From Phallusia mammillata (lineage: Eukaryota): a DNA stretch of 64,000 bases. The translations under genes and the position numbers were made by a program. The notes beneath the pieces are model-generated. The model had not been told where the DNA came from. It ran no database searches and saw nothing but the letters and a program-made list of their open reading frames with translations. This document shows, in pieces, positions 1-42,359 of this stretch; positions within the stretch are counted from its first letter, which is position 1; every line of letters starts with the position of its first letter. The stretch is from assembly GCA_965637545.1 (NCBI GenBank), contig OZ281494.1, positions 34,224,001 to 34,288,000 on the forward strand. The letters are read 5' to 3'.

Positions 1-839
1 CAAAATCAGTCGATGGATATACATAGAATATACATACATTTCGCCTAACTGACATCTTTAGTAAACAGTGACCACCAATGACCATGTTGTCTGTTGCAGG
101 GTCTGATACTGTTCAGCATAATCACTTTCTTTCAAGCTTTAAACTAATTTTAAGATGTTTTTGAACTTATATATAAAAGTTTTGGCTGTTTTGTAAGGGC
201 CTTTATCACTACATATAGAGATGTTGAAAACACATCAACAAACATAAGTTTGAAGTAGAGATTCCAGCAAATTAAGTTCTGTAGGAATAACTGTACATTG
301 TGCATGTCCGGTGAAATAATTTAATGATGTAGGACAGCAATAGCATAAGGTCTATAAAGAGCAAAATCGAAGAGTTTTTTTCTAATTTGTACAAAAACTC
401 AATTTAAATAAGATATTTAGGATACTTTTGAATATTATTTAGATGAAATATATTTGATTAAAAACAGTTGCAACACTGGTATTTACCTAAATTAGTAGAA
501 AGTCAAGGACTAAACATTTTAGCAAGGCAGCAATATGAGGTTACAGGACTGAATTGTTTTGTGAATGGGGACACACATCCTAATAACTGAGTAAAAATGC
601 TAGAAGGACGTGATATGGTCCACTGGTGCGCAAAGAAAACAGCGCCCTTGTCCGCCCCGAGCAGCCATACTAATTTCTTTACACGTCACGTCACAATACA
701 AAGGTTTCCCGCCGAAAAAATCCGCGCTAGTCAAACCGACTGGAAGCGAAAGATCGAACAAACAGACGCAACCTCTTACGCTCGGTCGTGCGCAAACGAC
801 GGTGGCGATAAGAAAGTCAAATATTAACCAGACTTTGTT

Positions 840-886
840 GGTTAGCTCTGCCGGTCTCGAGCCGGGAAGGACTAACCCTTAATAAT
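840..886 (+). other. GC-rich hairpin followed by TTAATAAT; possible Helentron or SINE 3' end
   Basis: GGTTAG (840-845) pairs with CTAACC (872-877) around CCGG-TCTCGAG-CCGG. It ends a GC-richer block starting near 600. Confidence 0.3.
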
Positions 887-2538
887 GCTGCCAGTCAGCC
901 TACAACTGTACTTTCAAGTACGGTGTAACTGCAGCTAGTTTTGACTTGATCCACCAATTGTGCCCTCCACTGTTTTGCTCTTCATAGCGTCTTAACGTTG
1001 CTCAGATATTTCCAAATTGGTGATTGTTCATGTGCAATTGTGTCGCTATGTTTTTTTTTTCTTCAAGCGAAATGAACTCAAATCAAAAGTTCGTTTTTAA
1101 AAACCTATTTTTAAAAACATGACAACGCTAAGACATTATTTTGAATGTATTTGTCACTAAAAATGGCTCCACCCATTACTGTAAAGTCGCAAATTTACGA
1201 TTTTTTGTGTTGTGTGTAACCATGTACGAGTGCGACAAGCTTATAAAGTTTGAGAACCGCTAATAATGATTTCAGCCAGGAATAGGGTTCTAAAACCATG
1301 AAAAATTGTCTATTTTTGATCACAATTTTCTGAAACTTTGGCGTAAATTTTACAATTACGACGTTAACGTTGAGTCCTACAGTTGATTTGTTTAGGTGTG
1401 TATTTTCTTACGTTTATAGTTTGTAGAAAAATATCGACTAACTATTCAAATTTCTTGAGGTAATGGAAATGTTAAACGTACGTTGACAAACTTAATACAA
1501 AGTAAGCTTTAAAACGATTTTCGGCGGTTAAGTTATACCAGTTTTAGATTAGAGCGAAATTCAGTGTATTGCTTTGGCATTGTCAATAACTGTGTGGAAA
1601 TTAAGTCAATAACTAGTAATGTTTTTGGCAACACTTTTAACAACTTAAGCAATGTTGTGTATTACAATCTTACAATGCAACACTCATTCAGGTTGTGGTT
1701 CTTTATGCAATACTGCATTCTGTATCTGTTTCAAAGAAAAAAAATCACAGTTACGAAGCATTGCAATATAGTTCAGAGCAGTTATGCCCCTAATCTTTCT
1801 GGGAATCGCTTCTAGGCAATCGGAAGTAATCGCTACAACGATTTCGTTCCGGTTAGGGAAGCTGTGGTGGAGTGGCGACAAGCACAATGACGCAAACATC
1901 ACAGCACATTGACTGTAGACACGCCTACAATGCTAAGCCTGGCACTGTCACAAAACTTTGTGGTTCACAGACAGAACCTTATGGAACAAGTTCTGCAATA
2001 TACAGTGTACAAATCTACAAGTGAAAAACTTTGGCACAAAATGAAAGTTGACTTTGCCTGTCCAAAATGTAGTTGGTCAATGTGAATGTTGACTTTGTTT
2101 AGTGATCTTAATAAATTAACAGCTTTCCTTAGATTAAATGCAACCACATTGTTCAGTCGGTGGAACCAAATGAATGTGTTATGTGCTGTTTTTGACCATT
2201 CAACAAGCAATGTATATTTTTGGCGGACAAAGGCATTTAACCAAAATGATATTTATGTTTTTCGCTATGGGAATGTACTGTGCATCTATTTTAACACAAA
2301 ATTATGTCACAATCCGTCCTTGATATCGATTATTTTAGCTTGCTAAATCGAACCACAACCCATTTTCTGTGTACCAGAGGTTCTCAACCGGGTTACTTTG
2401 ACCCCATGGTTTATATTAGTCAGCACGGAAATAAAAGTGTGCAAAGATAATGTTAAAAAATTGGAGCCATTTTTATCTCCAGAGCCTGGAAAAAGCAGGA
2501 GAAAACGGTTGAGAATCGCGAAAAATGCTTTACAATAC

Positions 2539-2755
2539 CTTGTAGTTGCCTAATACGGCTGTCAGCAGTTGAAGGGGCACTTGTAAAGCCGTAGTCTGGG
2601 TCGTCAAAAACATGGCTACCACTGCGGCCGCGCGGGGTATTGTGTGAAGAATAGCGACCGCCGGGTCGTCGGGGTGAAACGGGGTCATCAAAGGATTCCT
2701 CGTTCGAAATCGAGCTAGATCTCGAACTCCGCTGAGAAATTGCAGCTGCTTGCAT
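2539..2755 (-). CDS. SPTBN1: Beta-spectrin alternative first coding exon (short N-terminus)
   Basis: ATG at 2755, then 72 codons (MQAAAISQRSSRSSSIS...PSTADSRIRQLQ) plus 1 nt, then donor G|GTATTG at 2538 (phase 1). The ending SRIRQLQ parallels the recalled short N-terminus of human SPTBN1 (MELQRTSSISGPLSP...GRFKQLQ|DERE). The downstream CH1 exon is not in the window. Confidence 0.75.
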
Positions 2756-5700
2756 TTTCGCTAATCACTCTCTCTGTTTAATCCTTTCCGCCGTTTGGGC
2801 GTGAATTCCGGAAATAGTGATAGTAAATCCACTTTTGTAGGCACAGATTTTTGTGGTATTAATCCAATGTTATGAGCATACTAATCCCTACGTTTTAAGC
2901 AGCACAGAGGCGCTCATATATTTACACAGGTTATGATGTATTTGCTCTTGTGACCAACAAACGCCCTGGTTTGAACCAAAACACAGTTTTAAAGAACTAA
3001 CTGTTTGACAAAGACACAAAGTACGCTATGACGTCACAACCCAATCTGTGACGAAACAAAGTTGAGAAGCAATCGATTGTTTTGATTTAATAAAACACCG
3101 TACGGTACTGTAACCAGTAAAACGTTATGCAACTCACAACTGCTGTTGTTAATTCAAAGAAAATTTCGACAACTCACAGCTTTTCACTTGCTTAAGACAA
3201 CAGCCCCCATTTAAGCTCACCACTCTGCCTTAATCAACACAGAAAACCGCTTAAAGTCCGCTGAAGTTTAAACTGGTCATCACAGCGACAGGTGGCCGCA
3301 TAGCGAAAGTTTACAATTCGGATTGAAATGGAATTGGTGTTTGGAAAGTCGGGATTTTGCTGTCGGACAAAAACTAGCATGAAACAAGGATGGACATAAA
3401 GGTCTCTCTCTAAGCCCAAGAGCTCAAGTGCTATCCCGAGTGCCCTTGGTGAACGGTTTTGAATGCAGATACGAGCTTGCTAGTTGTTCTGTATTTTAAT
3501 TAGACGATATTGCGCCTGAAAAGTTGCTTACTGGCCAAAAGCAATTTTGGATAAATGGCACTTAATCGGTGGTTAACAAGTTTCAACTTTAAGAATGCCG
3601 AAAGAAAATTGCAAAAATACTGCTTGCTTTTTCAACACACAATTGGTTGGGATGTTTCCAATTGCACATTTTTATTTTGCAGCCGCACAGGACAAGCGAA
3701 ACGAAAGCGTCACTAACACAGTAAGGTTTTATCGATTAAACCACCGACCTCTGTATGACCTTGGCACGAACGCGCGCATTTTACAAATCCGGTTGTTTAT
3801 CAATCGTTAAACGTAAACATCGTTTTATACGAACGAACAAAGCAGTCCTGATACGTAAACTGGGTGCTAAACTTTACCTTAGTATTGGTGAGGTTACAGT
3901 AGCAAATTTAAACCTTATCATTTTTTATCCATTTGACAACAAAAATATCTAAAAGGGGCAGAAACATTTGGGTTTTGAAAGCTTAACAAATCCTTAAGCC
4001 ATCTCAAATCATCCATAACGTATCGTCATTTAACACATCATAGCTGCAAAAACTGGCCAAAACATGTCAGTACAGTACTAACCACAACCCAAGTACTGGC
4101 AAACAAATTGCAAGCTAGTCATGTTTTAAACCAACAACCAATAATGTTTACAAAAAGGTCGAAAATACATGACTTTCTAGGTTTTAATGAATCTTACTAC
4201 TAATCCTCAACTATCCACGGCTATAAAATTAATCAATAACATGTCTCACTAATCCTGCTACAACACAACAGCATCAGCAGCCTAAATAAGTTCTCTGCAA
4301 TCACAGGGACTGAGCCTACTTATCAATGGAGTCGCGGACCGTACACACCATAAAGTTGTACACATGCTTCAGCAAACCACGGCCATCGAAAAGCAATTAA
4401 CAGTTGCCAGTTTCCGCTACCTTACAACGCTCCTATTTCTCTCACGCAGTGCAAGGCCAGCTAGCTATATTGGCGCAACTCTAGCTCTCTAGAACCAGTT
4501 TTTCCTCCTTTGAAAGTGAGTTAGGTTGCGTATTTGCACTGAAATAGTGGCTATATGACACCTGTGCTCGTGTTACCAACGAAATTGCGAGAAAAATAGG
4601 AGTAATATGGGATTTACGATTCAACTTTTGGTTTGACGGTCTGTCGAACGCAGTAATAGCTGTGTTTTTTTTTCTTGCTGCAAACTTCGGCTTTTGTTGG
4701 GACAACTAGTTATTTGGTGCATAAGCATGTGCATGTTTGGTTACAATTTAAACATTAAACTTCAAGATTAACTTAAGAAAGTTTTTGGTAGATTTGTGAT
4801 GCAGACCCTGGCTTTACTATTCTTATACTAGCAAGAACTTGCATAAAAATCTTCGGGCAAAAAGGCTTGAACATAGTGTTTAAAGAAACTCATACATTGA
4901 TATTTACCAATTTTCCAAACACAAACTACACTTGTGTTGGCACCAGTCTGCACAACTAATTCAAAAATACCTGTTTTAAATCAGCACATAATATGCTTTT
5001 TGTGTTAAATTGGCATCTGTCTGGAAAACAATCCAATGTGGTAAATCACATTACAACATCAGTTGGTTGGTATTTACATGCTTTGTTTTCATGGAAAGTT
5101 AAAATTCAAACCTTTCACTGATTTTCAACTGTCCTAGCTGTACTTGCGTTCAAAGAGCTTTAAGGCAAATTAAACACTTTCAAATTGCTTGAAATTTCTA
5201 CATAACAGAGAAAACATAAAACCACAACTGCCGTAGGTTACATTTCTGTCTAACATAAACCACATTACATCCAACCATCCCGATTTGACCTCGCCTACAC
5301 AAACTACCCGACTTCAACCAATTGCATTCGTCGCTTCTATCCAGCAATAGTTGAACACAGTTGTTTCAATAATCACAAAATCGATTGAACGAGTTCGACA
5401 GTAACGAACAGATCGACGTGTATTGCGATTTCCGAACGCCCTGCCTTGCTCCATGCTGGCACAATTGAGTGAGAGAGGTTACAAAGAGCACAATGGCCGA
5501 CGTTTCCATACAAAACAAATAGCGGTTCACTCGTGAGAGCAATTCGGGTTCTGAGCGCTGTAAGAGCTGCTGGCCGTTCTTGGCTGTTCAGAATAATAGA
5601 CAAACGATTGTGAATTGAGTAAATAACAGGCTATTCATGCTGGAACTATTGTGGGGTAGTTTGGAGCAAATCTGAGGCTCTAGTGTGAAGATTGATCACG

Positions 5701-7094
5701 AGAAATGTAAAAGTTGGCGAAAGTGAAAACAATAGTGACAATTTAATTATCTGATCTTATTACAGGAAAACGAGTGGATAGGCACTCGCTTTTGCTGATT
5801 TAAAACGCTAACAGTTGTGACAGAAGAATATCAATTGCGACACCCTTTTTATAAATGGAAACGCCTATAAAAAGTGGGTCTTACAACCTTCCTTTATTTT
5901 TTGTTATACTTTGCAGTTCGCTACCTTAGTCCTTAAATCTAGTAGTTTGTCTGTTGCTAACAAAAGTTGCATGGATATTTTTTTCGTTTTACACACATTA
6001 CAGGTTCATTAAAACATCCGTAAAAAAAAACACCACGTTAGTAGTAACCTTTTGCGCTTTAAAACCATTGCAGCAAAATCCCAGTCTTTTTAATTATGAT
6101 GATAGAAATATATATTTCGCCAATTCGCTAAAATCCGTTCGTTATTCAACCTTTTTTGCATAACATGACACGAAGTGCAAATCACACACACACAAACACT
6201 CACGGTTCTCAAAACCCTAAAAATACGCATAACAAAGGCATTTTACAGGTCTGCAATCTAACAAAACGCAAGCACCACATGAATGGCGTTCAATCAAGAC
6301 ATATCTTTCCGTTGCTGTCCTTTTTCGACTAACAGGAGAGCCACACAAAATATATGGGAATACGTTTTCTTACAGACACAAGCAAAACGACAAAAAACAT
6401 TCAACATGTCTTCATCTCAACTCAAGCGGGTTTCCGAGCTAGCATACTTTAAGATCCTGCTATAATATTTAAATTAGTTTTAGGTTGCGAGACGTTTAGA
6501 ATCTGCACACTATGCTACGTAATTCGTTTGTTTGTTAAAAATGGCCCACCATCTTTTACTGCTTTTGCCTACGTTGTTAAACAGTAAAAATAACACACAT
6601 GATTTAAAACGTACGCCTATTTAGGTGCGCAAACGCTACTAATAAAAAATCACCTGTCGGAAGCCATCTTACTACGCCTGCCAAAAATCGTAGGAACACA
6701 ACATAACGCCTAACAAAAAATCTAGTTGTCGTTCACACACATATAGCAGCTAAGTCAGGTAGCCATCATTTTATTCAGCAACGCCCATCCTCACTAATAC
6801 AACATCTCGCCAATCAAATTCAGCGAAGCGCGAACGAGCTATTTAGAATCTTGAAATCAATGCCTTGTCACGTGACAGCGCCGGGTCAGTTACACAAAAG
6901 ACCTGCTTACGTAGCAGTGACGTCAACCACAACACTGGCACAGAAATTAAGGAATCTTGCAGTAGTAGCACCTGCTGAGAGGCTGAGCTATTGTGAAGTG
7001 GCTCGCGTGACGGTTGCTGACAAGAATATTCTGCTACTTTTGCATAAGTTTACTGCAATTTTGTGATCTATGGTAGTTCAACTTTTCATGATCA

Positions 7095-7300
7095 TACACA
7101 CAAGCTCCCTAAATGCACTGGGGATATATGTGAGCAACATTAAATGTTCACGCGGTTGCCACACATCAGTTAATGTGCAGCATAGATTTTTGTGTGTCTG
7201 GGCTTTCACACAAGCTCCCTAAGTACACTGAGGACCACTTTCAGCAACAGTGGATGTGAATTCTGTGGCCACATACAACTTATGCGCAGAAAAGATTTTC
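7095..7300 (+). repeat. Dispersed repeat with about 110-bp internal duplication; related copy at about 51470-51640
   Basis: ACACAAGCTCCCTAA..GTGAGCAACATTAAATG..GCCACACATCAG..GTGCAGCA recurs twice locally and again in a CCP110 intron. Confidence 0.55.
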
Positions 7301-8188
7301 ATGTCTACGCAATGCGTAACGATACTGGCCTGCTGCAGATTGTTCAGAATTGCCTGTAGCCTGTGCAAGCAGCGAGTATCTTTACACGCACAACAGAGGG
7401 ATTCGATGCAGCAATGTGATAAGCAACACAAAATCAATGTTTGCCACACGATAGACATATTGGTTTGTCATGGCCTGACAGAATTATAATAATATTGGAT
7501 TGCCCAAAAGCATTACATTCACCTGACACGCAGTTACGAATCAACTGAAAAAATACCAGTTCACATGTATAATAGACATAGAATGAATCAACATGAAAAA
7601 TGGCTCTATTTTGGCATTTAAGAAAATCGCAATTACCTCGTGAAGTCGCTGGAACGAATTGAATTTCCTTAAATTGGACTTTGACGTTTCCAACATAGAT
7701 CACCTAATTTCACAAAAGTAACTTTAAATTATCAACCAAAATAAAACGACATCACTTCGCCGGTGGTTAAGTTACGGAAAAACTGGTTAATGCGGATTTT
7801 TATTTCAATTCTATTTACGGTGCATTTCCAGCAGGTCACAAGCCCGCAATTTGCGTGGCGCGTTTCTGACTCCGTTACAAGCAAATTACAGTCAAATGCC
7901 CAACGGTCTCACAAAAATGCGCGTCCCTTTGCGTCCATGTTATCGATTCTCTAATTTTGACGGCAAGAGGAATGACAGCGGAGCTAACACAATATATATT
8001 GTTACCGTGACTAATTAATTTACAAAATAGTTCTGCACGAAAGAAAATGGTCCTGTATCTTTTCAACGATCTACAACGAAAGTAAAATATTCGCACTGTG
8101 GAATTAAATACGGGCCTTATTGAAAGATGACTTAACTGAACAGGATCTTAGGTCAAAATATTTAAGTAACGAGATGACATATTACATG

Positions 8189-8367
8189 CAGTAAACCTCG
8201 GTGAATTCAGGCACGTTTGAACCAATGTCCGAACTATACGAAGATCCGGGTTAACCGATGTCGATTAGTTAAAGCCTTACCACATTGCCAATCATTTGTA
8301 CCTTAAGTTTTGTCCGAATTAGGCGAATACCTGTATTAACCGAATCCGGTTTTACCCAGGTTTACTG
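8189..8367. mobile_element. Tc1/mariner (pogo/Tigger-like) MITE
   Basis: TIRs CAGTAAACCTCGGT / ACCCAGGTTTACTG (13/14). Right flank TA, left flank TG. Confidence 0.7.
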
Positions 8368-10239
8368 TACTTTAGTGCCAATTTCGTCCACAATTGCTTC
8401 ATGAAATTGATAACAAATCCGTACATACGCAATATTTTTAGGCAAGGTTTTCGGACAAAGTAACGATCAACATAAACAGTACACAGCTATGGGCTAACTC
8501 AAACCGTCTTCTAACAATTTTCAACATTAGTTGATCCTAAAACGAAGTGTGTAATGTAGCGGCTTTGCAAGCCTGAACTGGTGAAATATTAACTAATGGA
8601 GCAACGATAGAGTCGAACAATACAGGGCGTACAAAGCTCTCATATTCATTGCCACGTTTTTCTTCAAATTTTCAGCTGTAAAACCCCAGAGGCCTATTCA
8701 AGGTCGACTGGGGTAGATACAATTGACGCACTTTTTAAAGTTTAGTGAACATTGATGTTTTTATGTGACGGCTGTTCTCAAGGCTAGGGGTGACAGTGTT
8801 TTTACTGTGTTTTTAGTGGGAACTGGTTCCAAACAGGGACAAACTTAAATGCAATAGATGACTGTTGTGTTTCGCTTAAGAGCAAACTTATAATTGCATT
8901 TATGTACCTTTTTATACGAACAAAATAGCGGGCGGTAAAAACGGCCTACATCAAAGATATTGTGCAAATGCTGCTGCGCTTCTACTTCTTTTCACCTTTT
9001 TCAAGTTTTACAATCGATTTGCACTGTAGTAGCACGAGTCATAAGAAAACAAAACCATATAAATATAAAATACAAGACAAAACTAAAAACATTTTCGACA
9101 AGCATTATAGTAACAATATAAGTAACATAGCCTACTGATGACACCAGAAAAAAACATACAGAAATTGCCAAAATTGGAGGAACCCTGAATCAACGGAAAA
9201 AATTAAAGACTACAATAACTGTGCGACGAAAACACCTCGACTTTTAAACCGTAATCATTAATGCAAAATCACAGTAACAGTATAGACAGCTGCAAAGTTT
9301 AGAGTAAAATACACGCGCAAAAAAACCGTTGGCTTTAAACCAATGCCTAACCCATTTTGCACTATCATGGTCTATTTCAACACAACTAATACTCTATCTA
9401 CTAGAAAAACATGAACACTGCAATACCCTAACGAGACTCACATAAAATAACGGACAATAGTCGAAAAAAGGGCGTTAAACTGCGAAACGGGGGGTCTGGG
9501 GAAAATGTAATGATTAACCAGCGATAAAAAAACGCTGAGAATAAGCTGGGAGGTGTTGGTTCAAGTAGGAAAACGTCAACCTTCGGCCTATTGGAATCAA
9601 ACAACGCTGTGGTGAAGCGATCGATTATTAACGACTAACAGTAGTTTAGATTGCGCGGGATCATAACTATGACGTCATGATTTCTAATGTTCAAAGTTGG
9701 GGGGTTAATTGGGGGGCGAGTTTTTAAAAAGCGATTAAAGGTGTTTAAGCAACTAAGTCTGTTTTTACAGGCGTTTTTCGCCCAATATAAGCGACTTTAA
9801 TTCTATTATTGCAGCGTCATGCTTGCGTCGCTATGTAAATGTTGTCTTTGGCAATGTTGGAAAAACGTATAAAACATTGAAAGCGGTAATTAAAGAGAAG
9901 CGGGATGGAAAAATTGCTCCATTAGGATGAAAAAAGTTACAACAAAAATCACGACCTCCAATGAACACATTCTATAAGCGTTCGTGTTTTACTACGTTGC
10001 ATAAACTTATCTCAAAACGGCCTTTTGTAAAATAACAACTTTTTTTACACCCCAATCCTAATTCCACTTACCCACAGCAACGTAACTAATTGCAATGCGC
10101 TGTTTTCAGTATTTCATTTGCAGTGTTTGCATGTGTAAGGTTTACACAACGAGGTAGCCCGTAAAAAGTAGTCTCTAAAATAATATATTCTCATAAAGGT
10201 CAACCTTTTCTGAATAACAGTGTCTGCTCAGACTAATGA

Positions 10240-10295
10240 ATGTAAAGCCCCTATAAGATCCGACTGTGGTGAGATTCGAACCCATGACGAAAGAT
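10240..10295 (-). mobile_element. tRNA-derived SINE fragment (B box)
   Basis: Minus strand GTCATGGGTTCGAATCTCACCACAGTCGG. No complete cloverleaf. Confidence 0.45.
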
Positions 10296-11651
10296 TTTTG
10301 TTTTAATTTTCACATTTTGTGTCTCAACAGTAGTCAAAAACGCCAGAAACTAACAACCTAACCCAACCAAATACAAGCCACGTTTACGACAACGCCCCCA
10401 AGCGGATTGGGCTTAACCTTGACTGTAAAGTACATCCGTTGCTCCACCAACATAACTACTTCAAGTAGAACATTGAGAGCACTCGATTCAAAAGTTTCAA
10501 AGCCATACAAGTGGCGAGTACATGAACTGTAAAGTTGCACGAGCAACGATTTAAGCCAAGCAAAAGAACTTCGACGTTTTCTGGTTTTACGACAGAGTGT
10601 TTGTTACGCTTTAGGGCAATTATTATTTTTTTCAGACATTTTAGGCTTTGAACTATTTTTGCCTTAGGAAAATCATTCGTGGTTTGAATGAAAATTTAAA
10701 GAAGTACAAACTGTATTGAGTTGAAAAAGTCGCAACAAGACATGAAACTTTCACTACCTTTTTTCTTAAAATTCCTTTTTGTTCCCTAACTACAGGAATT
10801 GGAGGGGGAAATGATTGAAAAGTTCTGTACAATATTTTCAAACATCAGCCGATACACAAAGACATCGCAGCAAACTCCGTACATGCTTCGCAACTTTTCG
10901 GAGAATCAACTGAACAGCTTACAAAGAACTAAGGCTGCCGTAGAATTGACATTTTAATTATAGGGTTTAGTCGAGAGCTCCGTACTCTTCATTGAAAAGC
11001 CTTGTGCACAATGCAAACGATATATAATGCATTAGGAGGCAAGGCATTCACATTAAGGATACAAGCATGCTAATCTTTAATCGCATGTTGCACAAAAAGA
11101 TTATCTAACAGCAGGGGCAAAAAGTGGACATAAATTTGTCATCGGCAAATTAGTATATATGTGTGTTTTAGGGACAGAAAGTTAGTTGTTGTTGCAAAAT
11201 GTTTCTAGAAATGTTTTTTTCAGGGCATTGGGGTACGATTTACACAATTGTCTGTAAATATAAAAAATCTAATGTTTTACTGTACCTAGCACTTTCCTGT
11301 TGCGTCTTGCTTTGAATTAACATATTAATAGAATGAATGAGCCTGTTTCCTAAACTTGACAAACTAGAATGAATTGACTATGTGTAATTTCTCTTCATTG
11401 AGCTACATCGTTGTGGTAATAACCAGCATATATTTACCCATGAGAACATCGTACAAATGACAGTGATAATGTGGATGAATTCTAACGTGGTCTCAGGATG
11501 AATTCTAATGTATTCTTTGTTAACAAAATAGTTCCTCGCCGTGAATTAATAAATTCGAATTTTGTTCAACTCGTACTTTCACTGAGAATGTCCGAGTAGT
11601 GCGTATTAGCAAAGTTAAATGGGAAACATTGTTTTTTTATATTACGCTAAC

Positions 11652-12548
11652 CTGCGAGTGCCTTGATGCGATTCTGTTCGAACTGACGAGCTGAGCTGTT
11701 ATCCAAATCCTCATCGTCTTCATACTCGGCAGTATCCCACCTCTTATCAATATATTCCTCCATATCGTATCCCAGATCTTCGTTGCCATTATCAACTGCA
11801 GTCTTTTGCGCTGTTTGTCTAAAAAGTACGTGTTTAGAAAGAAGGATAGATGAAAAATGAAAAAAAAAACTGCTGACAGCGCGAATAAAAATACCAACAG
11901 TAAAATCCAACAGTAAAGCTGTAGAACATACAATTTAAAACATCTTGCAAAACCAAACAGTTTTGGTCAAGTCAAGGGAATGCACATTTCACCGATCTGT
12001 ATGATTAGTTCCAGCAGTTAACACCCGACGGTGCTTGCTGGGGCAAAATTTAAACAATGCTTTTCAATAATTGTTATAATTTAAATCCAGATTAAAGAAA
12101 CGAACGAATTGGTTAACTTTTAGCAGGTTGCAAATAGGCAGGACAATTTCCTCTACCAGGCTCTTGTCTTCAAACTGAGTTGTAAAGTTTTTAGGTTTTG
12201 GCCGGAATTCAAATCAAGGAACTGGCGACTTTTTGAGTAAAAATCGCTTTTACAAACCACACCTATACCTTTTGCTGCAAGTCTAACCCTATTTAACAAC
12301 GCTAAGACAAAAAAATCGACTTCTCAAATCCAACGAACATCAAAGACTTACGGGGAAACAGCAGAAGCTGCGTTAATCTCGAACTTTCTACTTTGTTGGA
12401 CTTCACCGGCCATCTTAGATCGCACAACTTGCTCCTCAACTCCACCAGATTCGGGAACTAAGTTGTTGAGGTCGTCACGTGCAACGTTGTCCAGCTGCGT
12501 CGAAACGCCACCACTCTGAAATGTGGTCGACTGCGAATAAGCGAACAT
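11652..12548 (-). CDS. SPTBN1: Beta-spectrin canonical N-terminal coding exons
   Basis: Exon 11818-11652 (acceptor tttttag, donor G|GTTAGC, phase 2 to phase 1) encodes ...YIDKRWDTAEYEDDEDLDNSSARQFEQNRIKALA, matching recalled human SPTBN1 NNRWDVDDWDNENSSARLFERSRIKALA|DERE. The preceding exon ends at 12352 (CC|GTAAGT, phase 2, in frame) and starts at ATG 12548, ATG 12413 or acceptor 12515. Symbol is nominal: probably a co-orthologue of vertebrate SPTB/SPTBN1/2/4. Confidence 0.88.
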
Positions 12549-12653: not shown

Positions 12654-12716
12654 CTGAGTGCTGCTGGTAAAATATTCTGATCCATCAGTGTAAGCGGGTT
12701 TGAAATTCCCGGCCAT
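12654..12716 (-). CDS. Candidate alternative first exon of beta-spectrin (MAGNFKPAYTDGSEYFTSSTQ)
   Basis: gttATGG start, 21 codons, donor CAG|GTAGTA (phase 0). Compatible with the phase-0 acceptor tttcag|AGT at 12515. Confidence 0.4.
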
Positions 12717-13245: not shown

Positions 13246-13971
13246 TTGGCTTTGTCCAGTGAAATATTGTCCTTGGGAGATTTGAGTAGATGTAAAATGT
13301 GGTCCACCTTCAGTGGATGAGCTGACAGTATGAACTTGTCTGCTTACTGTTTTAGAAGATGAGTGGTAGTGTCTCACCGATGATTTTGTTTCGATCACTT
13401 GTCTATTAGATAGTTCCACCTGCAATAAAAACAGTTACTCATATAAATTGCAGAAATTTCTGAAGCAAAACTTCAATCTAAGTTGAAAAACTTAAATTGT
13501 TACATAAAAATTTAATAGAACATGAAAAAAGCGATTTAGAAAGAGACCAAAAGTGTAAAGAAAAAATTTGATTATTCTGACAATTTTGACTTGAAAGTTA
13601 TTTTTTCCTGAATCATTTCTTGCTCCTATATATTTTACCAAATATGCTAAAAACTTTAATCTGCATTGGAGAGTGTATAAATTAATTAGATTTGGCAAAA
13701 GTTATCATACACAAAAACCTGCAACATAATAAAACATGAAAAAAAAACAATTTAGAAAGAGACTAAAAAACGAGATTATTCAGACAACTTTGACTTAGAA
13801 GTTATTTTTTCCCATTTTATATTTTTTTTTCTTATATTTTTTCACCAAATATGATGAAGAATCAAGACTCACTGTTTGATAAATCGGATTCAGGGCTTGC
13901 AAGTGCTCTGAAGAAACATGATACGTCCCTCGAGGATTGCCTTGTTCGTCCAATTCCTGTGAAACCTGCTC
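13246..13971 (-). CDS. Two candidate upstream coding exons extending the beta-spectrin N-terminus
   Basis: 13971-13873 (attag|, EQVSQELDEQGNPRGTYHVSSEHLQALNPIYQT, |gtgagt) and 13419-13246 (ttgcag|, VELSNRQVIETKSS...GQYFTGQSQ, |gttagt). Both are phase 0/0, stop-free and in frame with the acceptor at 12515. Confidence 0.6.
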
Positions 13972-38622: not shown

Positions 38623-41600
38623 ATGGCAAGTCAATCTAATGTAAGTCAGGTTTGTTAACAGTTGTTAATACTTGTAATAGTTTGTAATATGTTTCATTAG
38701 TTAACAAAAGGTGTTTGCATTCAGATGCGTGAATTTGATGCTGATGATATTCTGTGTGACCCAAAGTCAAGTATTGTGGGTTCTGGAAGTTTCGGAGTGG
38801 TTCTCGTCGGAAAACATAAATCACTCAACAAACTTGCTGTGAAAGTCATGGAATGCCATGGCGGGGAACAAACTAAAAAACGGTTTCAAAAATGGTGAGC
38901 TTGCTTAAAAGATAATGTACTACAGTATGTCAAACCTTTTGAAAATAACTCAACTTATCCATGCAGTACGTAACAAGCATGTAATTTAAACCCATTACGA
39001 TAAAACTTTTAGTTAAAACCAAATATTTTAGGCCTAATTTTATTTACAGTGCCATGGAAGAACTGGGTAAGCTGCAAACTGCCCAAACTGAACACGTAGT
39101 GAGGACATATGGCTGGTTGACGCTGTCGTGTGGCATGGGAATTGTCATGCAGTATTATGAAGGTGGTAACCTCAGAGATTTTCTTCTCAATGACGAAATC
39201 ACCAAAGGAATTCCACTCCGTCTTCGTCAGTTGGTCGAAACAGCGGACGGAATAGCTTTCATTCACAATTTGCCAGGTCACAAATTGGTTCATAACGACA
39301 TAAAACCAGAAAACATCTTGCTGACGAGAGATCTACACGCAAAATTGACAGATTTTGGCTCCGCAAAGCTTGCTGCTACAACTGGATCAACCACTGTTCG
39401 ACTTTCAGCAACTGGAGAAAAGGTTCAATTCACTGCTCTATACACCGCTCCAGAAAAACTTAAAAAAATTACCATGAAACCGAAAAGAGACCATGACGTG
39501 TATGGGTATGGCTTGGTAATCCATATGTCTCTTACTTGTGAAGAGCCTTATCCACCAACGGATGGAGTTGCATTGTTGAATGCCATCATCAACGGTGAGA
39601 GACCTGACTGTCATGCGATTGATGATTTGAAAGCAGGTCTCAATAACAACGACAAAGGAGCAGTCGAAGTGATGGAAGAAGAAATGAAAAGATGCTGGGA
39701 GCACGATCCAACAAAACGTCCAGATATAACTGAAGTTAGAGACAAATTTCAGAGTTTAGTTGACGCACAAAACCCAGCAGCGATTCTGGAACAAGTGACA
39801 AACGCTGTGAGGCAAATGGATTTAAAAGTTGAAAGACCAGCTGAGAATCAACGTGTTCCGATTCGCCAGTTTTCACCACGTCACCAAACATTTGTAACAG
39901 CACAAGGTATAAAGCGAATGTTGGTTGAATAACTAGACACAAAACTTTACAATATTTTTTTTAATTATTAACGTCCTTCCGTTTATAATGACACCATTTT
40001 CGTTATTCGTGCGTATGTACAACCGATGTTTGTTGATTGACAGATTTGAGCAGACCAGCAGTCAACATCGACCTTCCCAGCACATCACGTGACACGCCAG
40101 CAGGTCAAAGTTCACGACCACAACTGATGGAAACAGCACATGGCGTCACATCACCACAGGAACAAGGTATTTCAGTATCGCACACTTGTATTCATATCTC
40201 CCTTCCGAGATAAAGCTTGTTACGTATTTAAACCAAAAGCAAGGTCAAAATCTTTCCAATTAACCATGCCATGCAACTATCAATTTTTTGGACAGTATTA
40301 TTAACTTTCCCAAAACACCCCACGTTGTTTCAGAACAGCCTCGTTAAAAAATAAGTTAAAAACGGCGCAATTTAAAATGAACACCCAACAGCGGCAACAA
40401 ATTTTGGGGGTGACTGGCTGTTATAGGCCAGGGGTGGCCAACCCGCGGCTCGCAAGCCGCATGCGGCTCTTCGCCTGGTTTTATGCGGCTCTTACGTCGT
40501 TGTCGAAGTTTGGGGCCATTGTGTATATTTGGGTTACTATGTGGCGATCCGGTACAAAAATCGTTAAATTGAAAGTAAAGTTTTGACAATTTTGCTTTTG
40601 AACAAACTTATTATCGGTATGGCCACAAACCTTGCCTTAAAACTGCAAGTTTATGTGACAAATGGCATGATTATGATGGCATATATTTAATTGTGAACAA
40701 TAAATGGTTGCTCATTGTTGCGTACAATGCGAATGAGACACAAAGCAACAGCAATATTTACAATAAATGTGTTCCAAAGTAACCAATGCTTCTTTGTTTT
40801 TCGGGTTATGACGAACGTTATATTTTATCGGCAATTTGTCTTATGGGTTTGAATTGAGCGATTGTCGGTGGTGAATGCATTAATGACGTCGCAATGAATT
40901 TAGTTTCGCCACTTTGCACTTGGGGCACATGCGCGTTAGGTGTTTGGGGCGCGTGCGCCTTAGATGAAAAAACCGCAAGTTTTTTCAGCAGGGAAAATCT
41001 TTTAAATCAACAGTTTTTGTCAAGGTAGCCGTCAAATTGGCGGTGAAAAAAGATTTTAGCAATTCACCAGTGATGAATCTCACCGCAAGTTATTTATAGA
41101 ATGAGAAAAAGGGGTGTTTTAATTCATATGTTTTTGTTTGCTGGATTCGTTGAAATGAGAGTTTTATGTGAGAGATAGTGTTTGCACTGACCATTTATTG
41201 TTGAAAATGACTGGCCCGTGGTCTGTACAAGTCAAATTGTGTCATCTGGCTAAGCACAGGTCTCTGTGTGTGTGTGGAAGGGACGAACCATTTAACAAAT
41301 GTGCTTGTGTGTATAATGTGGCCCTTTGTGGTAACACAATAAAAAATATGGCTCTTAGGCTTCGACCGGTCGGCCACCCCTGATATAGGCAGTGGAATAA
41401 TAATAGTTTTTTTGTATTTGGGTCGATTGTGCGACATATTTTAGTCTTTTGGGAGATATTTGTAAGAAAAACATGCTTGACAAATTTAGGTGACGTCACT
41501 AGCACAGACCTAGATGAAATATTTCAACCCAAAAGTAAGTTTTCCTCGTTTGTTTTTTGTCGTGTTTCCGCGTGTTTTGTATATCAATGTACTTTTTTTT

Positions 41601-42359
41601 ATTTTGTCAGGTGGAAGTAACGAAAAGTCCCGGTTGGTTCAGAAATACGCCGATTCTGTGAAACGGGGAAAATACAACGAAGCAAATTTAATAAAACAGC
41701 AACTTTCAAGGTTAATCGAAGGTCAAGTCAAAACCACAGCAAATGAAATAAAAACTTTTGCTGTAAAACATCGAAATGCGAAGAAATTTAACGAGTCGAT
41801 CCTGTTCTGCCATATTGCATCAGATTTCTATGCAAAGCAACAAAGTCCCGATGACGCAGCGAGAGGTGTACAGGATTGTGGTTTGGAATTGAGTGAAACA
41901 AGCAAATCAATGTTGGAGAGTGACGTCACAAACAAATCCATTGTAGGCGACCACGTGATTTCCTTGTTTGCTGACATGCGTCACCAGATTCAAACTCTAC
42001 CACAAGTAGACGACAAAATTCGATGTGTATGTGAGGCCAGGTGTTTGAGTTGCATTGGAGTTGGCCTTCTGTTGATCGGATCGTATCAACTGATGGAAGA
42101 ACCTATCAGGGAAGGAATAAGTTTGTTGAAACGCAAGTTTGGAGATGGTGCAGCCAAATATCAAGTCTACGGTCACTTGTTGAACAACCTTGGACTGTAC
42201 TGTGAGTCAACCTCACGTTTTGAGGAGGCTGTGAAATATTCCACCGAAGCAATTGAAGCTTACAGAAAATCTGAGGATTTGACCGAGGAAGAGCGAAAGC
42301 GACTCATGGACAAGAGCCAAAGAAATTCGTGGAGACTCATGACATTACAGAAGCTATAA
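38623..42359 (+). CDS. RIPK-like (TKL group) Ser/Thr kinase with C-terminal TPR-like helical domain, about 638 aa
   Basis: Exons 38623-38640 (MASQSN; uncertain because exon 2 also begins with ATG), 38725-38894, 39050-39906, 40044-40166, 41611-42359, with phases 0/2/1/1 consistent. Kinase motifs GSGSFGVV, LAVK, HNDIKPEN, DFG, YTAPE, DVYGYG are intact. The C-terminus contains YGHLLNNLGLYCESTSRFEEAVKYSTEAIEAY (TPR-like). Confidence 0.88.
40429..41382. mobile_element. Non-autonomous hAT (Charlie-like) element in kinase intron 4
   Basis: TIRs CAGGGGTGGCCAACC / GGTCGGCCACCCCTG (14/15). 8-bp TSD TTATAGGC / ATATAGGC. No transposase ORF. Confidence 0.85.

What the first reader, a model, noticed from the sequence alone, without database searches (positions are those of the whole stretch)
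2539..11818. Beta-spectrin has both vertebrate-type alternative N-termini, suggesting an ancient two-promoter design
Seen: two separate exons 9 kb apart both end in phase 1 with a G, one at ...NRIKALA-G|GT (11652) and one at ...SRIRQLQ-G|GT (2539), so either can complete the Asp codon of the shared CH1 exon (DERE...). Recalled knowledge: human SPTBN1 has this pair, ...RSRIKALA|DERE and MELQRTSSISGPLSP...GRFKQLQ|DERE. The short exon here also has SRSSSIS...PVSP near its start. Inference: this isoform switch, which changes the residues just ahead of the actin-binding CH1 domain, predates vertebrates. I do not know of this being described in an invertebrate chordate.
Basis: partly seen in the sequence, partly recalled or inferred. 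Interest (0 to 1): 0.75.

Follow-up and report, generated by a model that had tools for sequence, protein, structure and literature searches.

The report
Sea-squirt beta-spectrin alternative short N-terminus
A probable sea-squirt beta-spectrin gene really makes a second, short protein start that is spliced onto the actin-binding domain in place of the usual start, and this short start matches the one known from vertebrate SPTBN1, so the switch is most likely older than vertebrates.

Summary
On the minus strand there are two coding exons that both end in phase 1 with a G followed by GT. The canonical exon (11818-11652) ends in NRIKALA. The short exon (2755-2539) has its own ATG and ends in SRIRQLQ.

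Transcript contigs from three runs in two studies leave the genome exactly at 2539. They continue with letters that read D-E-R-E-A-V-Q-K-K-T, the start of the CH1 exon, which lies off the window. The short exon is therefore expressed and spliced as predicted.

The same exon is found in six other genomic contigs, with its own ATG, a RIRQLQ ending and a G|GT donor. It is under purifying selection. In three of these contigs it lies between the canonical exon and the CH/spectrin exons.

Vertebrate short exons from the protein database end in NYNQLEGRFKQLQ plus G|GT. A profile-profile comparison with the tunicate-type exon gave P = 2.5e-4, and 0 of 400 column shuffles reached that score. Neither short exon resembles the long exon.

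The "long" exon is not the first coding exon, because a conserved upstream exon (12530-12352) joins it in frame. A separate promoter is plausible but not shown, and spliced-leader trans-splicing remains open.

This is a new member of a known kind and of moderate interest. I did not find it noted elsewhere in this scan.

The parts
2539..2755 (-). Coding part of the short alternative N-terminal exon. ATG at 2755-2753, 72 codons, then a phase-1 G at 2539. The donor GT follows at 2538-2537.
   Evidence: Searches give the sequence and translation. One search shows contigs of three RNA runs leaving the genome at 2539 and continuing into DEREAVQKKT. Searches give six homologous exons and dN/dS of 0.05-0.14.
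2756..2966 (-). 5' leader of the short-isoform transcript, about 211 nt, with two very short upstream ORFs. The transcript contigs end at 2966 (X1) and 2963 (X2) with no extra letters. An AG at 2967-2966 preceded by a pyrimidine-rich run could also be a splice or trans-splice acceptor.
   Evidence: table 8; sequence.
3029..3036 (.). Palindromic TGACGTCA (CRE-type site) about 66 nt upstream of the contig 5' ends. This is a weak hint of a promoter.
   Evidence: There are six such sites in the 64 kb window, so chance is about 1-2% for this position. L004 has one 127 nt before its ATG; the other loci have none within 800 nt of theirs.
11652..11818 (-). Canonical ('long') N-terminal exon. It has a phase-2 acceptor, encodes QTAQKT...YIDKRWD...NSSARQFEQNRIKALA, and ends in a phase-1 G at 11652 followed by GT.
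   Evidence: One search matches it to residues 18-49 of PDB 8IAH chain M and residues 22-52 of 6ANU chain f, ending at the last residue before CH1. Searches show the same exon in L004, L005 and L006.
12352..12530 (-). Upstream coding exon of the long isoform ('exon B'). It encodes ...LDNVARDDLNNL...SKMAGEVQQSRKFEINAASAVS and its donor CC|GTAAGT is in phase 2. The conserved Met at 12413-12411 is the probable canonical start codon.
   Evidence: It is conserved in L004, L005 and L006, with GTRAG donors in phase 2 in 4 of 4 genomes matching phase-2 acceptors of the long exon. There is no RNA evidence here.
12654..12716 (-). Candidate further upstream coding exon (ATG at 12716, 21 codons, phase-0 donor), in frame with exon B. 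This is unsupported beyond the sequence itself.
   Evidence: No counterpart was found in L004-L006.

Best explanation
The window holds the 5' end of a conventional beta-spectrin gene on the minus strand. The gene offers two mutually exclusive N-terminal coding modules to the same CH1 exon, which lies left of the window.

Module 1 (canonical) is encoded by at least two exons, 12530-12352 and 11818-11652. It ends in the conserved NSSAR-FE--RIKALA segment. In beta-III spectrin this segment forms the actin-contacting helix that continues into CH1 helix A.

Module 2 is a single exon (2966-2539) about 9 kb downstream, inside the first large intron. It has its own leader and ATG, and it encodes a 72-residue Ser/Arg/Pro-rich, probably disordered peptide that ends in SRIRQLQ.

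Both modules end with a G in phase 1, so either completes the Asp codon of D-E-R-E. Splicing the long exon into the short exon would hit a stop after 11 codons, so the two are alternatives.

Shown here: the short module is transcribed, spliced to CH1 and conserved as coding sequence.

Inferred:
- It is the orthologue of the short first coding exon of vertebrate SPTBN1, so the switch dates back at least to the tunicate-vertebrate ancestor.
- It is driven by its own start site near 2966.
- It changes or regulates actin binding by swapping the N-terminal helix for a variant (R-I-R-Q-L-Q in place of R-I-K-A-L-A) preceded by a phosphorylatable tail. All seven tunicate-type sequences carry a basic R-x-[RK]-S-G-S motif (R-x-R in six, R-P-K in P0004).
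For: - Exon anatomy.
- Splice junction to DEREAVQKKT in X1, X2 and X7, from two studies.
- The contigs of X1 and X7 stop exactly 28 nt into CH1. A k=31 assembly graph would branch there if a second form sharing only the last 'AG' (such as the long exon ...GCAG) is present in the same runs. This is inference.
- Six homologous exons, P0002-P0007, each with its own ATG, a RIRQLQ ending and a G|GT donor.
- Same-strand order exon B, long exon, short exon in L004, L005 and L006. CH and spectrin-repeat ORFs follow downstream in L005 and spectrin-repeat ORFs in L006; none was recorded for L004.
- Purifying selection: dN/dS 0.14 and 0.05 in the two closest pairs, with flanking DNA unalignable.
- A human SPTBN1-short specific peptide is published and was detected by mass spectrometry (PMC10382975).
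- Vertebrate genomic ORFs P0010-P0022, including an icefish, end NYNQLEGRFKQLQ+G. The three loci I fetched have a G|GTAAG donor there.
- hhalign of tunicate against vertebrate short exons gave P = 2.5e-4 over 20 columns anchored at the exon end, with 0 of 400 column shuffles reaching it.
- P0003 against the published human 26-mer: 1 of 5000 shuffles reached the score.
- Short against long exon is not significant: 7 of 120 and 35 of 120 shuffles.
- Functional context: beta-III residues S37-A52 form an actin-bound helix contiguous with CH1 from D53, and removing the N-terminus abolishes actin binding and function in flies (PMC8810934; PMC5676748).
Against: - Similarity to vertebrates is confined to about 20 residues. 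hhalign probability is only 43%, and the profile of the seven exons does not pick out the published 26-mer alone (493 of 3000 shuffles).
- The vertebrate gene layout (long exon, short exon, CH1) was not checked here, because no spectrin exon lies within 10 kb of the vertebrate short exons fetched.
- The junction from 11652 to CH1 was not observed directly, because the single reads call covered 1-6000 only.
- There are no CAGE or 5' end data, so the promoter is unproven.
- No relative was found outside tunicate-like and vertebrate sequences. The searches could only see short ORFs that share exact words, so this says little either way.
- The organism's identity is taken from unchecked notes.
- The effect on actin binding is pure inference.
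Confidence: 0.72

Rival explanations
1. Independent origin. Tunicates and vertebrates each evolved an intronic alternative start exon. The shared G-R-x-x-Q-L-Q ending reflects convergence, because the last residues must continue the helix into CH1.
For: The similarity is short and lies exactly where structural constraint is expected. The N-terminal two thirds differ: tunicates have RRSSLxRPRSGSHxFDDPDY and vertebrates have MELQ..PGPLSP. hhalign probability is only 43%.
Against: The exons share the same phase, the same final G, their own ATG and the same last three residues. They also share G at -7, D/E at -8 and an aromatic residue 12-14 residues before the end, and P0003 has YNYTQ where vertebrates have YNYNQ. 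The score beats 400 of 400 column shuffles. Neither short exon resembles the long exon, which is under the same helix constraint.
Confidence: 0.2
2. There is no second promoter. The short isoform's 5' end is made from the pre-mRNA of the upstream promoter, either by spliced-leader trans-splicing at the AG at 2967-2966 or by cis-splicing from an upstream non-coding exon that skips the long module.
For: A pyrimidine-rich run plus AG sits exactly where two contigs end (2966 and 2963). Spliced-leader trans-splicing is common in ascidians (established knowledge). Low-depth RNA contigs lie upstream at 3210-3409 and 3682-3863.
Against: The contigs carry no leader letters beyond 2966. A CRE lies 66 nt upstream. 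Three relatives have a conserved non-coding block with an identical TTTGCTTTGTATATA between the long and short exons. In L001 and L006 it lies 250-500 nt before the ATG and is better conserved than the leader or the intron.
Confidence: 0.3
3. The short exon is a non-functional by-product: a cryptic or 'poison' start exon, or a chance ORF, with no protein made.
For: The contigs have low depth (4-12) and there are two small upstream ORFs in the leader. There is no protein evidence in this organism.
Against: The reading frame, ATG and donor phase are kept in seven genomes whose synonymous sites are saturated, with dN/dS of 0.05-0.14. The vertebrate counterpart is detected as protein.
Confidence: 0.03

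Closest known systems
Human and vertebrate SPTBN1 short N-terminus (RefSeq 'isoform 2' type; 'SPTBN1-short')
   Same: Both are a single exon with its own ATG. Both end ...G-R-x-x-Q-L-Q plus a phase-1 G|GT and join the D-E-R-E start of CH1. Both are Ser/Pro-rich and probably disordered. The last 20 residues are significantly similar.
   Different: The tunicate exon is longer (50-72 residues against 36). It carries a conserved basic block, RRSSLxRPRSGSHxFDDPDY, that is absent from vertebrates, and it lacks MELQ and PGPLSP. In humans the short start is annotated together with a short C-terminus, which cannot be examined here. The vertebrate exon layout and promoter are from my knowledge of public annotation and were not tested here.
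Canonical beta-spectrin N-terminus, the actin-binding helix ahead of CH1 (beta-III S37-A52, PDB 6ANU; erythroid beta, PDB 8IAH)
   Same: The long exon matches it and ends at the same residue before CH1. The short exon keeps the R-I-[KR]-x-L-x pattern in the last six residues.
   Different: The short exon replaces the NSSARLFE part and everything upstream. Overall it shows no significant similarity to the long exon.
Alternative first coding exons in other spectrin-superfamily genes (dystrophin Dp427 brain/muscle/Purkinje first exons; utrophin A/B)
   Same: Tissue-specific promoters give unique short N-terminal peptides ahead of a shared tandem-CH actin-binding domain (established knowledge).
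   Different: Those are different genes with unrelated peptides. Promoter use is documented there but not here.

Membership tests
Conventional beta-spectrin gene (5' end) | Conserved N-terminal segment ...RWD...NSSAR-FE--RIKALA ending directly before CH1 | tested here: met
   One search matches it to 8IAH chain M residues 18-49 (E = 6e-4) and 6ANU chain f residues 22-52. Searches show the same exon in three related loci.
Conventional beta-spectrin gene (5' end) | Tandem CH domains and spectrin repeats follow | tested here: inconclusive
   These lie off the window. Only the first 28 nt of CH1 (DEREAVQKKT) are seen, in RNA contigs. In related locus L005 the CH and spectrin-repeat Pfam hits follow the short exon; in L006 spectrin-repeat hits follow.
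SPTBN1-type short alternative N-terminus | Separate exon with its own ATG that ends ...QLQ plus a phase-1 G before GT | tested here: met
   Window. Related loci L001 and L002. Vertebrate loci L007-L009.
SPTBN1-type short alternative N-terminus | Spliced directly to the CH1 exon (D-E-R-E...) | tested here: met
   loose ends at 2539 in X1, X2 and X7, from two studies.
SPTBN1-type short alternative N-terminus | Sequence homology to the vertebrate exon | tested here: met
   hhalign P = 2.5e-4 with 0 of 400 shuffles reaching it. P0003 against the published human peptide: 1 of 5000 shuffles. Only the last ~20 residues are involved; the N-terminal part is not significant.
SPTBN1-type short alternative N-terminus | Lies between the canonical N-terminal exon and the CH1 exon | tested here: met
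   Window: 11652 upstream of 2755, with CH1 off the window. L004, L005 and L006. The vertebrate side was not testable because introns exceed 10 kb.
SPTBN1-type short alternative N-terminus | Driven by its own promoter | tested here: inconclusive
   Contig 5' ends lie at 2963-2966, a CRE lies at 3036-3029, and relatives have a conserved TATA-like block. There are no 5'-end data and trans-splicing is not excluded.

The most novel reading that the evidence does not exclude
The QLQ-type start is an ancient switch, at least as old as the tunicate-vertebrate ancestor and older than the duplications that gave the vertebrate beta-spectrin paralogues. It exchanges the actin-contacting N-terminal helix of beta-spectrin for a variant helix behind a phosphorylatable disordered tail, and so gives cells a regulated, lower- or differently-tuned actin attachment. 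The little-studied human SPTBN1 short start would then be a conserved functional module rather than an annotation curiosity.
Probability: 0.45. Interest if true: 0.6.

Novelty: new member of a known kind. Interest (0 to 1): 0.45.

Why it matters
The residues just ahead of CH1 are needed for beta-spectrin to bind actin and to function in vivo (PMC8810934, PMC5676748). The alternative start of SPTBN1, which replaces exactly these residues, has hardly been studied.

If the alternative has been kept under purifying selection in both tunicates and vertebrates, it has a function worth testing. Ascidian embryos, with one beta-spectrin gene and easy reporter and knock-down assays, would be a simple system for that test.

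The work also corrects the gene model: the canonical N-terminus is split over at least two exons here.

Tried and rejected
- A CH1 exon inside the window (1-2538): none.
- phmmer of the 72-residue peptide against 1.84 billion representatives. It returned only two true relatives and one spurious repeat protein, P0001, which matched through a repeated DDPVSP.
- Word searches with the 3- and 7-sequence profiles found six relatives and no full-length spectrin, because only proteins of 40-126 residues could be seen.
- A scan of metagenome contigs found nothing.
- Paper searches for the human N-terminal peptide found one paper. Searches for run accessions, for tunicate beta-spectrin isoforms, for unc-70 N-terminal variants and for an SPTBN1 alternative promoter found nothing relevant.
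- The idea that the short exon is a duplicate of the long exon's 3' end is not supported.
- The conserved block of L001, L005 and L006 was not found in the window.
- Rfam found nothing in the window.
- Pfam found nothing on exon B or on the exon candidate at 13246-13419.
- The organisms behind L001-L006 could not be identified.
- P0010-P0013 have the human-type exon sequence and may come from human or other mammalian samples. I did not fetch or compare their contigs and left them out of the vertebrate alignment.
Full report
**1. What is in the sequence**

Read on the minus strand, the window shows an ATG at 2755-2753 followed by 72 codons. These begin MQAAAISQRSSRSSSIS, contain PVSP and end SRIRQLQ. 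A single G follows at 2539, then GTATTG.

Nine kilobases upstream, an exon begins after a pyrimidine tract and AG (first base 11818). It encodes QTAQKT...YIDKRWD...NSSARQFEQNRIKALA and again ends in a single G (11652) followed by GT.

No CH1-like ORF lies between 1 and 2538. The coordinates and phases in the finding are correct.

**2. Is the short exon used?**

Ten public runs of one organism, from three studies, hold the stretch 2480-2900. I laid four runs on window 1-6000.

- X5 is a DNA run. It has about 100-fold depth in every bin and its contigs are colinear with the genome across 2278-2983.
- X1 and X2 (study P1) and X7 (study P3) have contigs only over 2539-2966, 2539-2963 and 2539-2858.
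- At 2539 each of these contigs runs on with 23-28 letters that do not fit the genome.
- Reverse-complemented, those letters read AT GAG CGT GAA GCT GTA CAG AAG AAA AC.
- With the G of 2539 this gives Asp-Glu-Arg-Glu-Ala-Val-Gln-Lys-Lys-Thr. This is the start of the CH1 exon, as seen in full in related locus L005 (DEREAVQKKTFTKWVNSHL).

It also shows that these runs contain RNA.

In X1 and X7 the overhang is exactly 28 nt. A k=31 assembly graph would break there if another molecule that shares only the final 'AG' with the short exon enters the same CH1 exon. The long exon ends ...GCAG, so this fits co-expression of the long form. Unspliced pre-mRNA would give the same pattern, so I count it only as consistent.

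**3. Conservation**

phmmer against 1.84 billion representatives found two tiny genomic ORFs. Two word searches with profiles brought the total to six, P0002-P0007.

- All six start with Met.
- All share a block close to RRSSLxRPRSGSHxFDDPDY.
- All end ADGRIRQLQ followed by G.
- In L001 and L002, where I read the DNA, the G|GT donor sits at the same position.

In the three long contigs, tblastn with the window's peptides places the canonical exon (...NSSARLFERSRIKALA, G|GT) 1.3-4 kb upstream of the short exon on the same strand. ORFs with CH and spectrin-repeat Pfam hits follow downstream in L005, and spectrin-repeat hits follow in L006.

Synonymous sites are saturated in most pairs, while non-synonymous differences stay at 11-41%. 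In the two closest pairs dN/dS is 0.14 and 0.05. Between L001 and L006 the coding exon aligns but the leader and the intron do not. The exon is therefore a conserved coding exon.

**4. Is it the vertebrate short N-terminus?**

A proteomics paper prints the peptide TSSISGPLSPAYTGQVPYNYNQLEGR as specific to human 'SPTBN1-short' and detects it by mass spectrometry (PMC10382975).

A word search with a 40-residue query returned 13 short genomic ORFs.

- Four of them reproduce the quoted human start exactly up to QLQ.
- The others are variants. One is from the icefish Chaenocephalus aceratus.
- All end NYNQLEGRFKQLQ, and all but the icefish ORF (which stops at QLQ) continue with G.
- In the icefish locus and in two further non-human loci the DNA reads ...CAA G|GTAAG.

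I aligned six clearly non-human sequences (A3) and compared them with the seven tunicate-type sequences (A2).

- hhalign aligned the last 20 columns of both, end to end, with P = 2.5e-4 and probability 43%.
- None of 400 column-shuffled versions of A3 reached the score (real 22.5; shuffles mean 8.3, maximum 21.3). The reversed alignment scored 9.3.
- P0003 has AYNYTQADGRIRQLQ. Against the published human 26-mer it beat all but 1 of 5000 shuffles.
- Neither short exon is significantly similar to the long exon: 7 of 120 and 35 of 120 shuffles. This argues against two independent duplications of the long exon.

Taken with the identical phase, final G, own ATG and position, common descent is the best reading. 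I put it at about 0.75-0.8.

I could not check the vertebrate exon order, because no spectrin exon lies within 10 kb of the short exon in the vertebrate loci. That part rests on public annotation as I know it.

**5. Corrections to the gene model**

The long exon is not a first exon.

- In all four genomes it begins with an acceptor in phase 2, and the coding sequence is conserved right up to it.
- An exon 0.1-0.9 kb upstream (window 12530-12352) is conserved in all four genomes. It reads ...RD..NN[LI]...M-x(9)-FEI[NS]AAS...
- This upstream exon ends with GTAAGT or GTGAG exactly in phase 2 in 4 of 4 genomes.
- The in-frame stop that follows is simply part of the donor.
- A conserved Met (12413-12411) stands nine residues before FEIN. 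From memory, vertebrate beta-spectrins have Met-x10-[IL]EIQ, so this Met is probably the canonical start. This comparison was not tool-checked.
- Residues upstream of that Met are also conserved and open, so a longer extension is possible.
- Further Ser/Thr/Gln-rich exon candidates at 12716-12654 and 13420-13246 have no support outside the window.

I had no reads call left to test any of this.

**6. Promoter or not**

Evidence for a separate start site:
- Two contigs end within 3 nt of each other (2966 and 2963) and carry no foreign letters.
- A palindromic TGACGTCA lies 66 nt upstream. There are six such sites in the window, so this is a weak hint.
- L001, L006 and L005 share a colinear non-coding block between the long and short exons, with an identical TTTGCTTTGTATATA. 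In L001 and L006 this block is better conserved than the exon itself.
- The window lacks this block.

Evidence against:
- 2967-2966 is an AG behind a pyrimidine-rich run.
- Ascidians use spliced-leader trans-splicing widely.

So 'two promoters' is plausible (about 0.6) but not shown.

Joining the long exon to an acceptor at 2965 would give a stop after 11 codons. The two modules are therefore alternatives in any case.

**7. How it probably works**

In beta-III spectrin, residues S37-A52 (...SSARLFERSRIKALA) form a helix that lies on actin and continues into CH1 helix A from D53. Removing the N-terminus abolishes actin binding, and the truncated protein cannot rescue flies (PMC8810934; PMC5676748).

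The exon boundary here falls exactly at that A|D border. The short exon therefore exchanges the whole actin-contacting N-terminal segment. It keeps only an R-I-[KR]-x-L-x pattern and adds a Ser/Arg/Pro-rich tail. In all seven tunicate-type sequences that tail carries R-x-[RK]-S-G-S, a consensus for basophilic kinases.

That this tunes or regulates actin binding is inference and was not tested.

**8. Organism and limits**

- Other agents' notes call this genome a sea squirt, and one names Phallusia mammillata. I could not verify this.
- I could not identify the organisms behind L001-L006.
- P0010-P0013 may derive from human or other mammalian samples. I did not fetch or compare their contigs.

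**9. Verdict**

This is a real, expressed and conserved alternative N-terminus of a probably tunicate beta-spectrin, and most likely the orthologue of the vertebrate SPTBN1 short start.

- The kind is known in vertebrates. Its presence, conservation and age outside vertebrates appear undescribed in the papers searched, although automatic gene models may already contain it.
- I score it as a new member of a known kind, with interest 0.45.

Noticed in passing
window 12352-12530 (-), with L004 5037-5162, L005 7155-7262, L006 8351-8485: A conserved coding exon lies upstream of the 'long' exon, with phase-2 GTRAG donors in 4 of 4 genomes and a conserved Met. The canonical N-terminus is therefore split by an intron here, and it may carry an extra N-terminal extension, because residues upstream of the Met are also conserved.
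   Followed up: partly
window 12654-12716 and 13246-13420 (-): Further exon-like segments with good splice sites encode Ser/Thr/Gln-rich peptides with a recurring [YH]FT..[ST]Q motif, in frame with exon B. No counterpart was found in the related loci and there is no Pfam match.
   Followed up: partly
L001 173-426, L006 9491-9743, L005 8838-8982: A conserved non-coding block lies between the long and short exons and includes an identical TTTGCTTTGTATATA. It is 81% identical between L001 and L006, where the neighbouring leader and intron do not align. It is a candidate promoter of the short isoform and is absent from the window.
   Followed up: partly
window 800-1200: The DNA run X5 shows about 20-fold excess depth (about 2300 against about 100), with many loose ends at 919-980. 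This is a repeated element inside the spectrin intron.
   Followed up: no
window 3210-3409 and 3682-3863: Two low-depth contigs of RNA run X1 lie upstream of the short exon's leader, with no joint to it. They could be unspliced pre-mRNA of the long isoform or an upstream start.
   Followed up: no
window 39054-42359 (+): An ORF with a protein kinase domain (Pfam E = 1e-28) is followed by an ORF with a weak TPR hit. It is already noted by the scan as a separate finding (s1-394865).
   Followed up: no
P0021 and P0022 (fish short exons): The icefish form (P0022) and the similar P0021 (source species unknown) are 56-65 residues long, with an inserted Ser/Pro-rich stretch, against 36 residues in the other vertebrate forms. 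The middle of the exon is therefore length-variable in vertebrates too.
   Followed up: no
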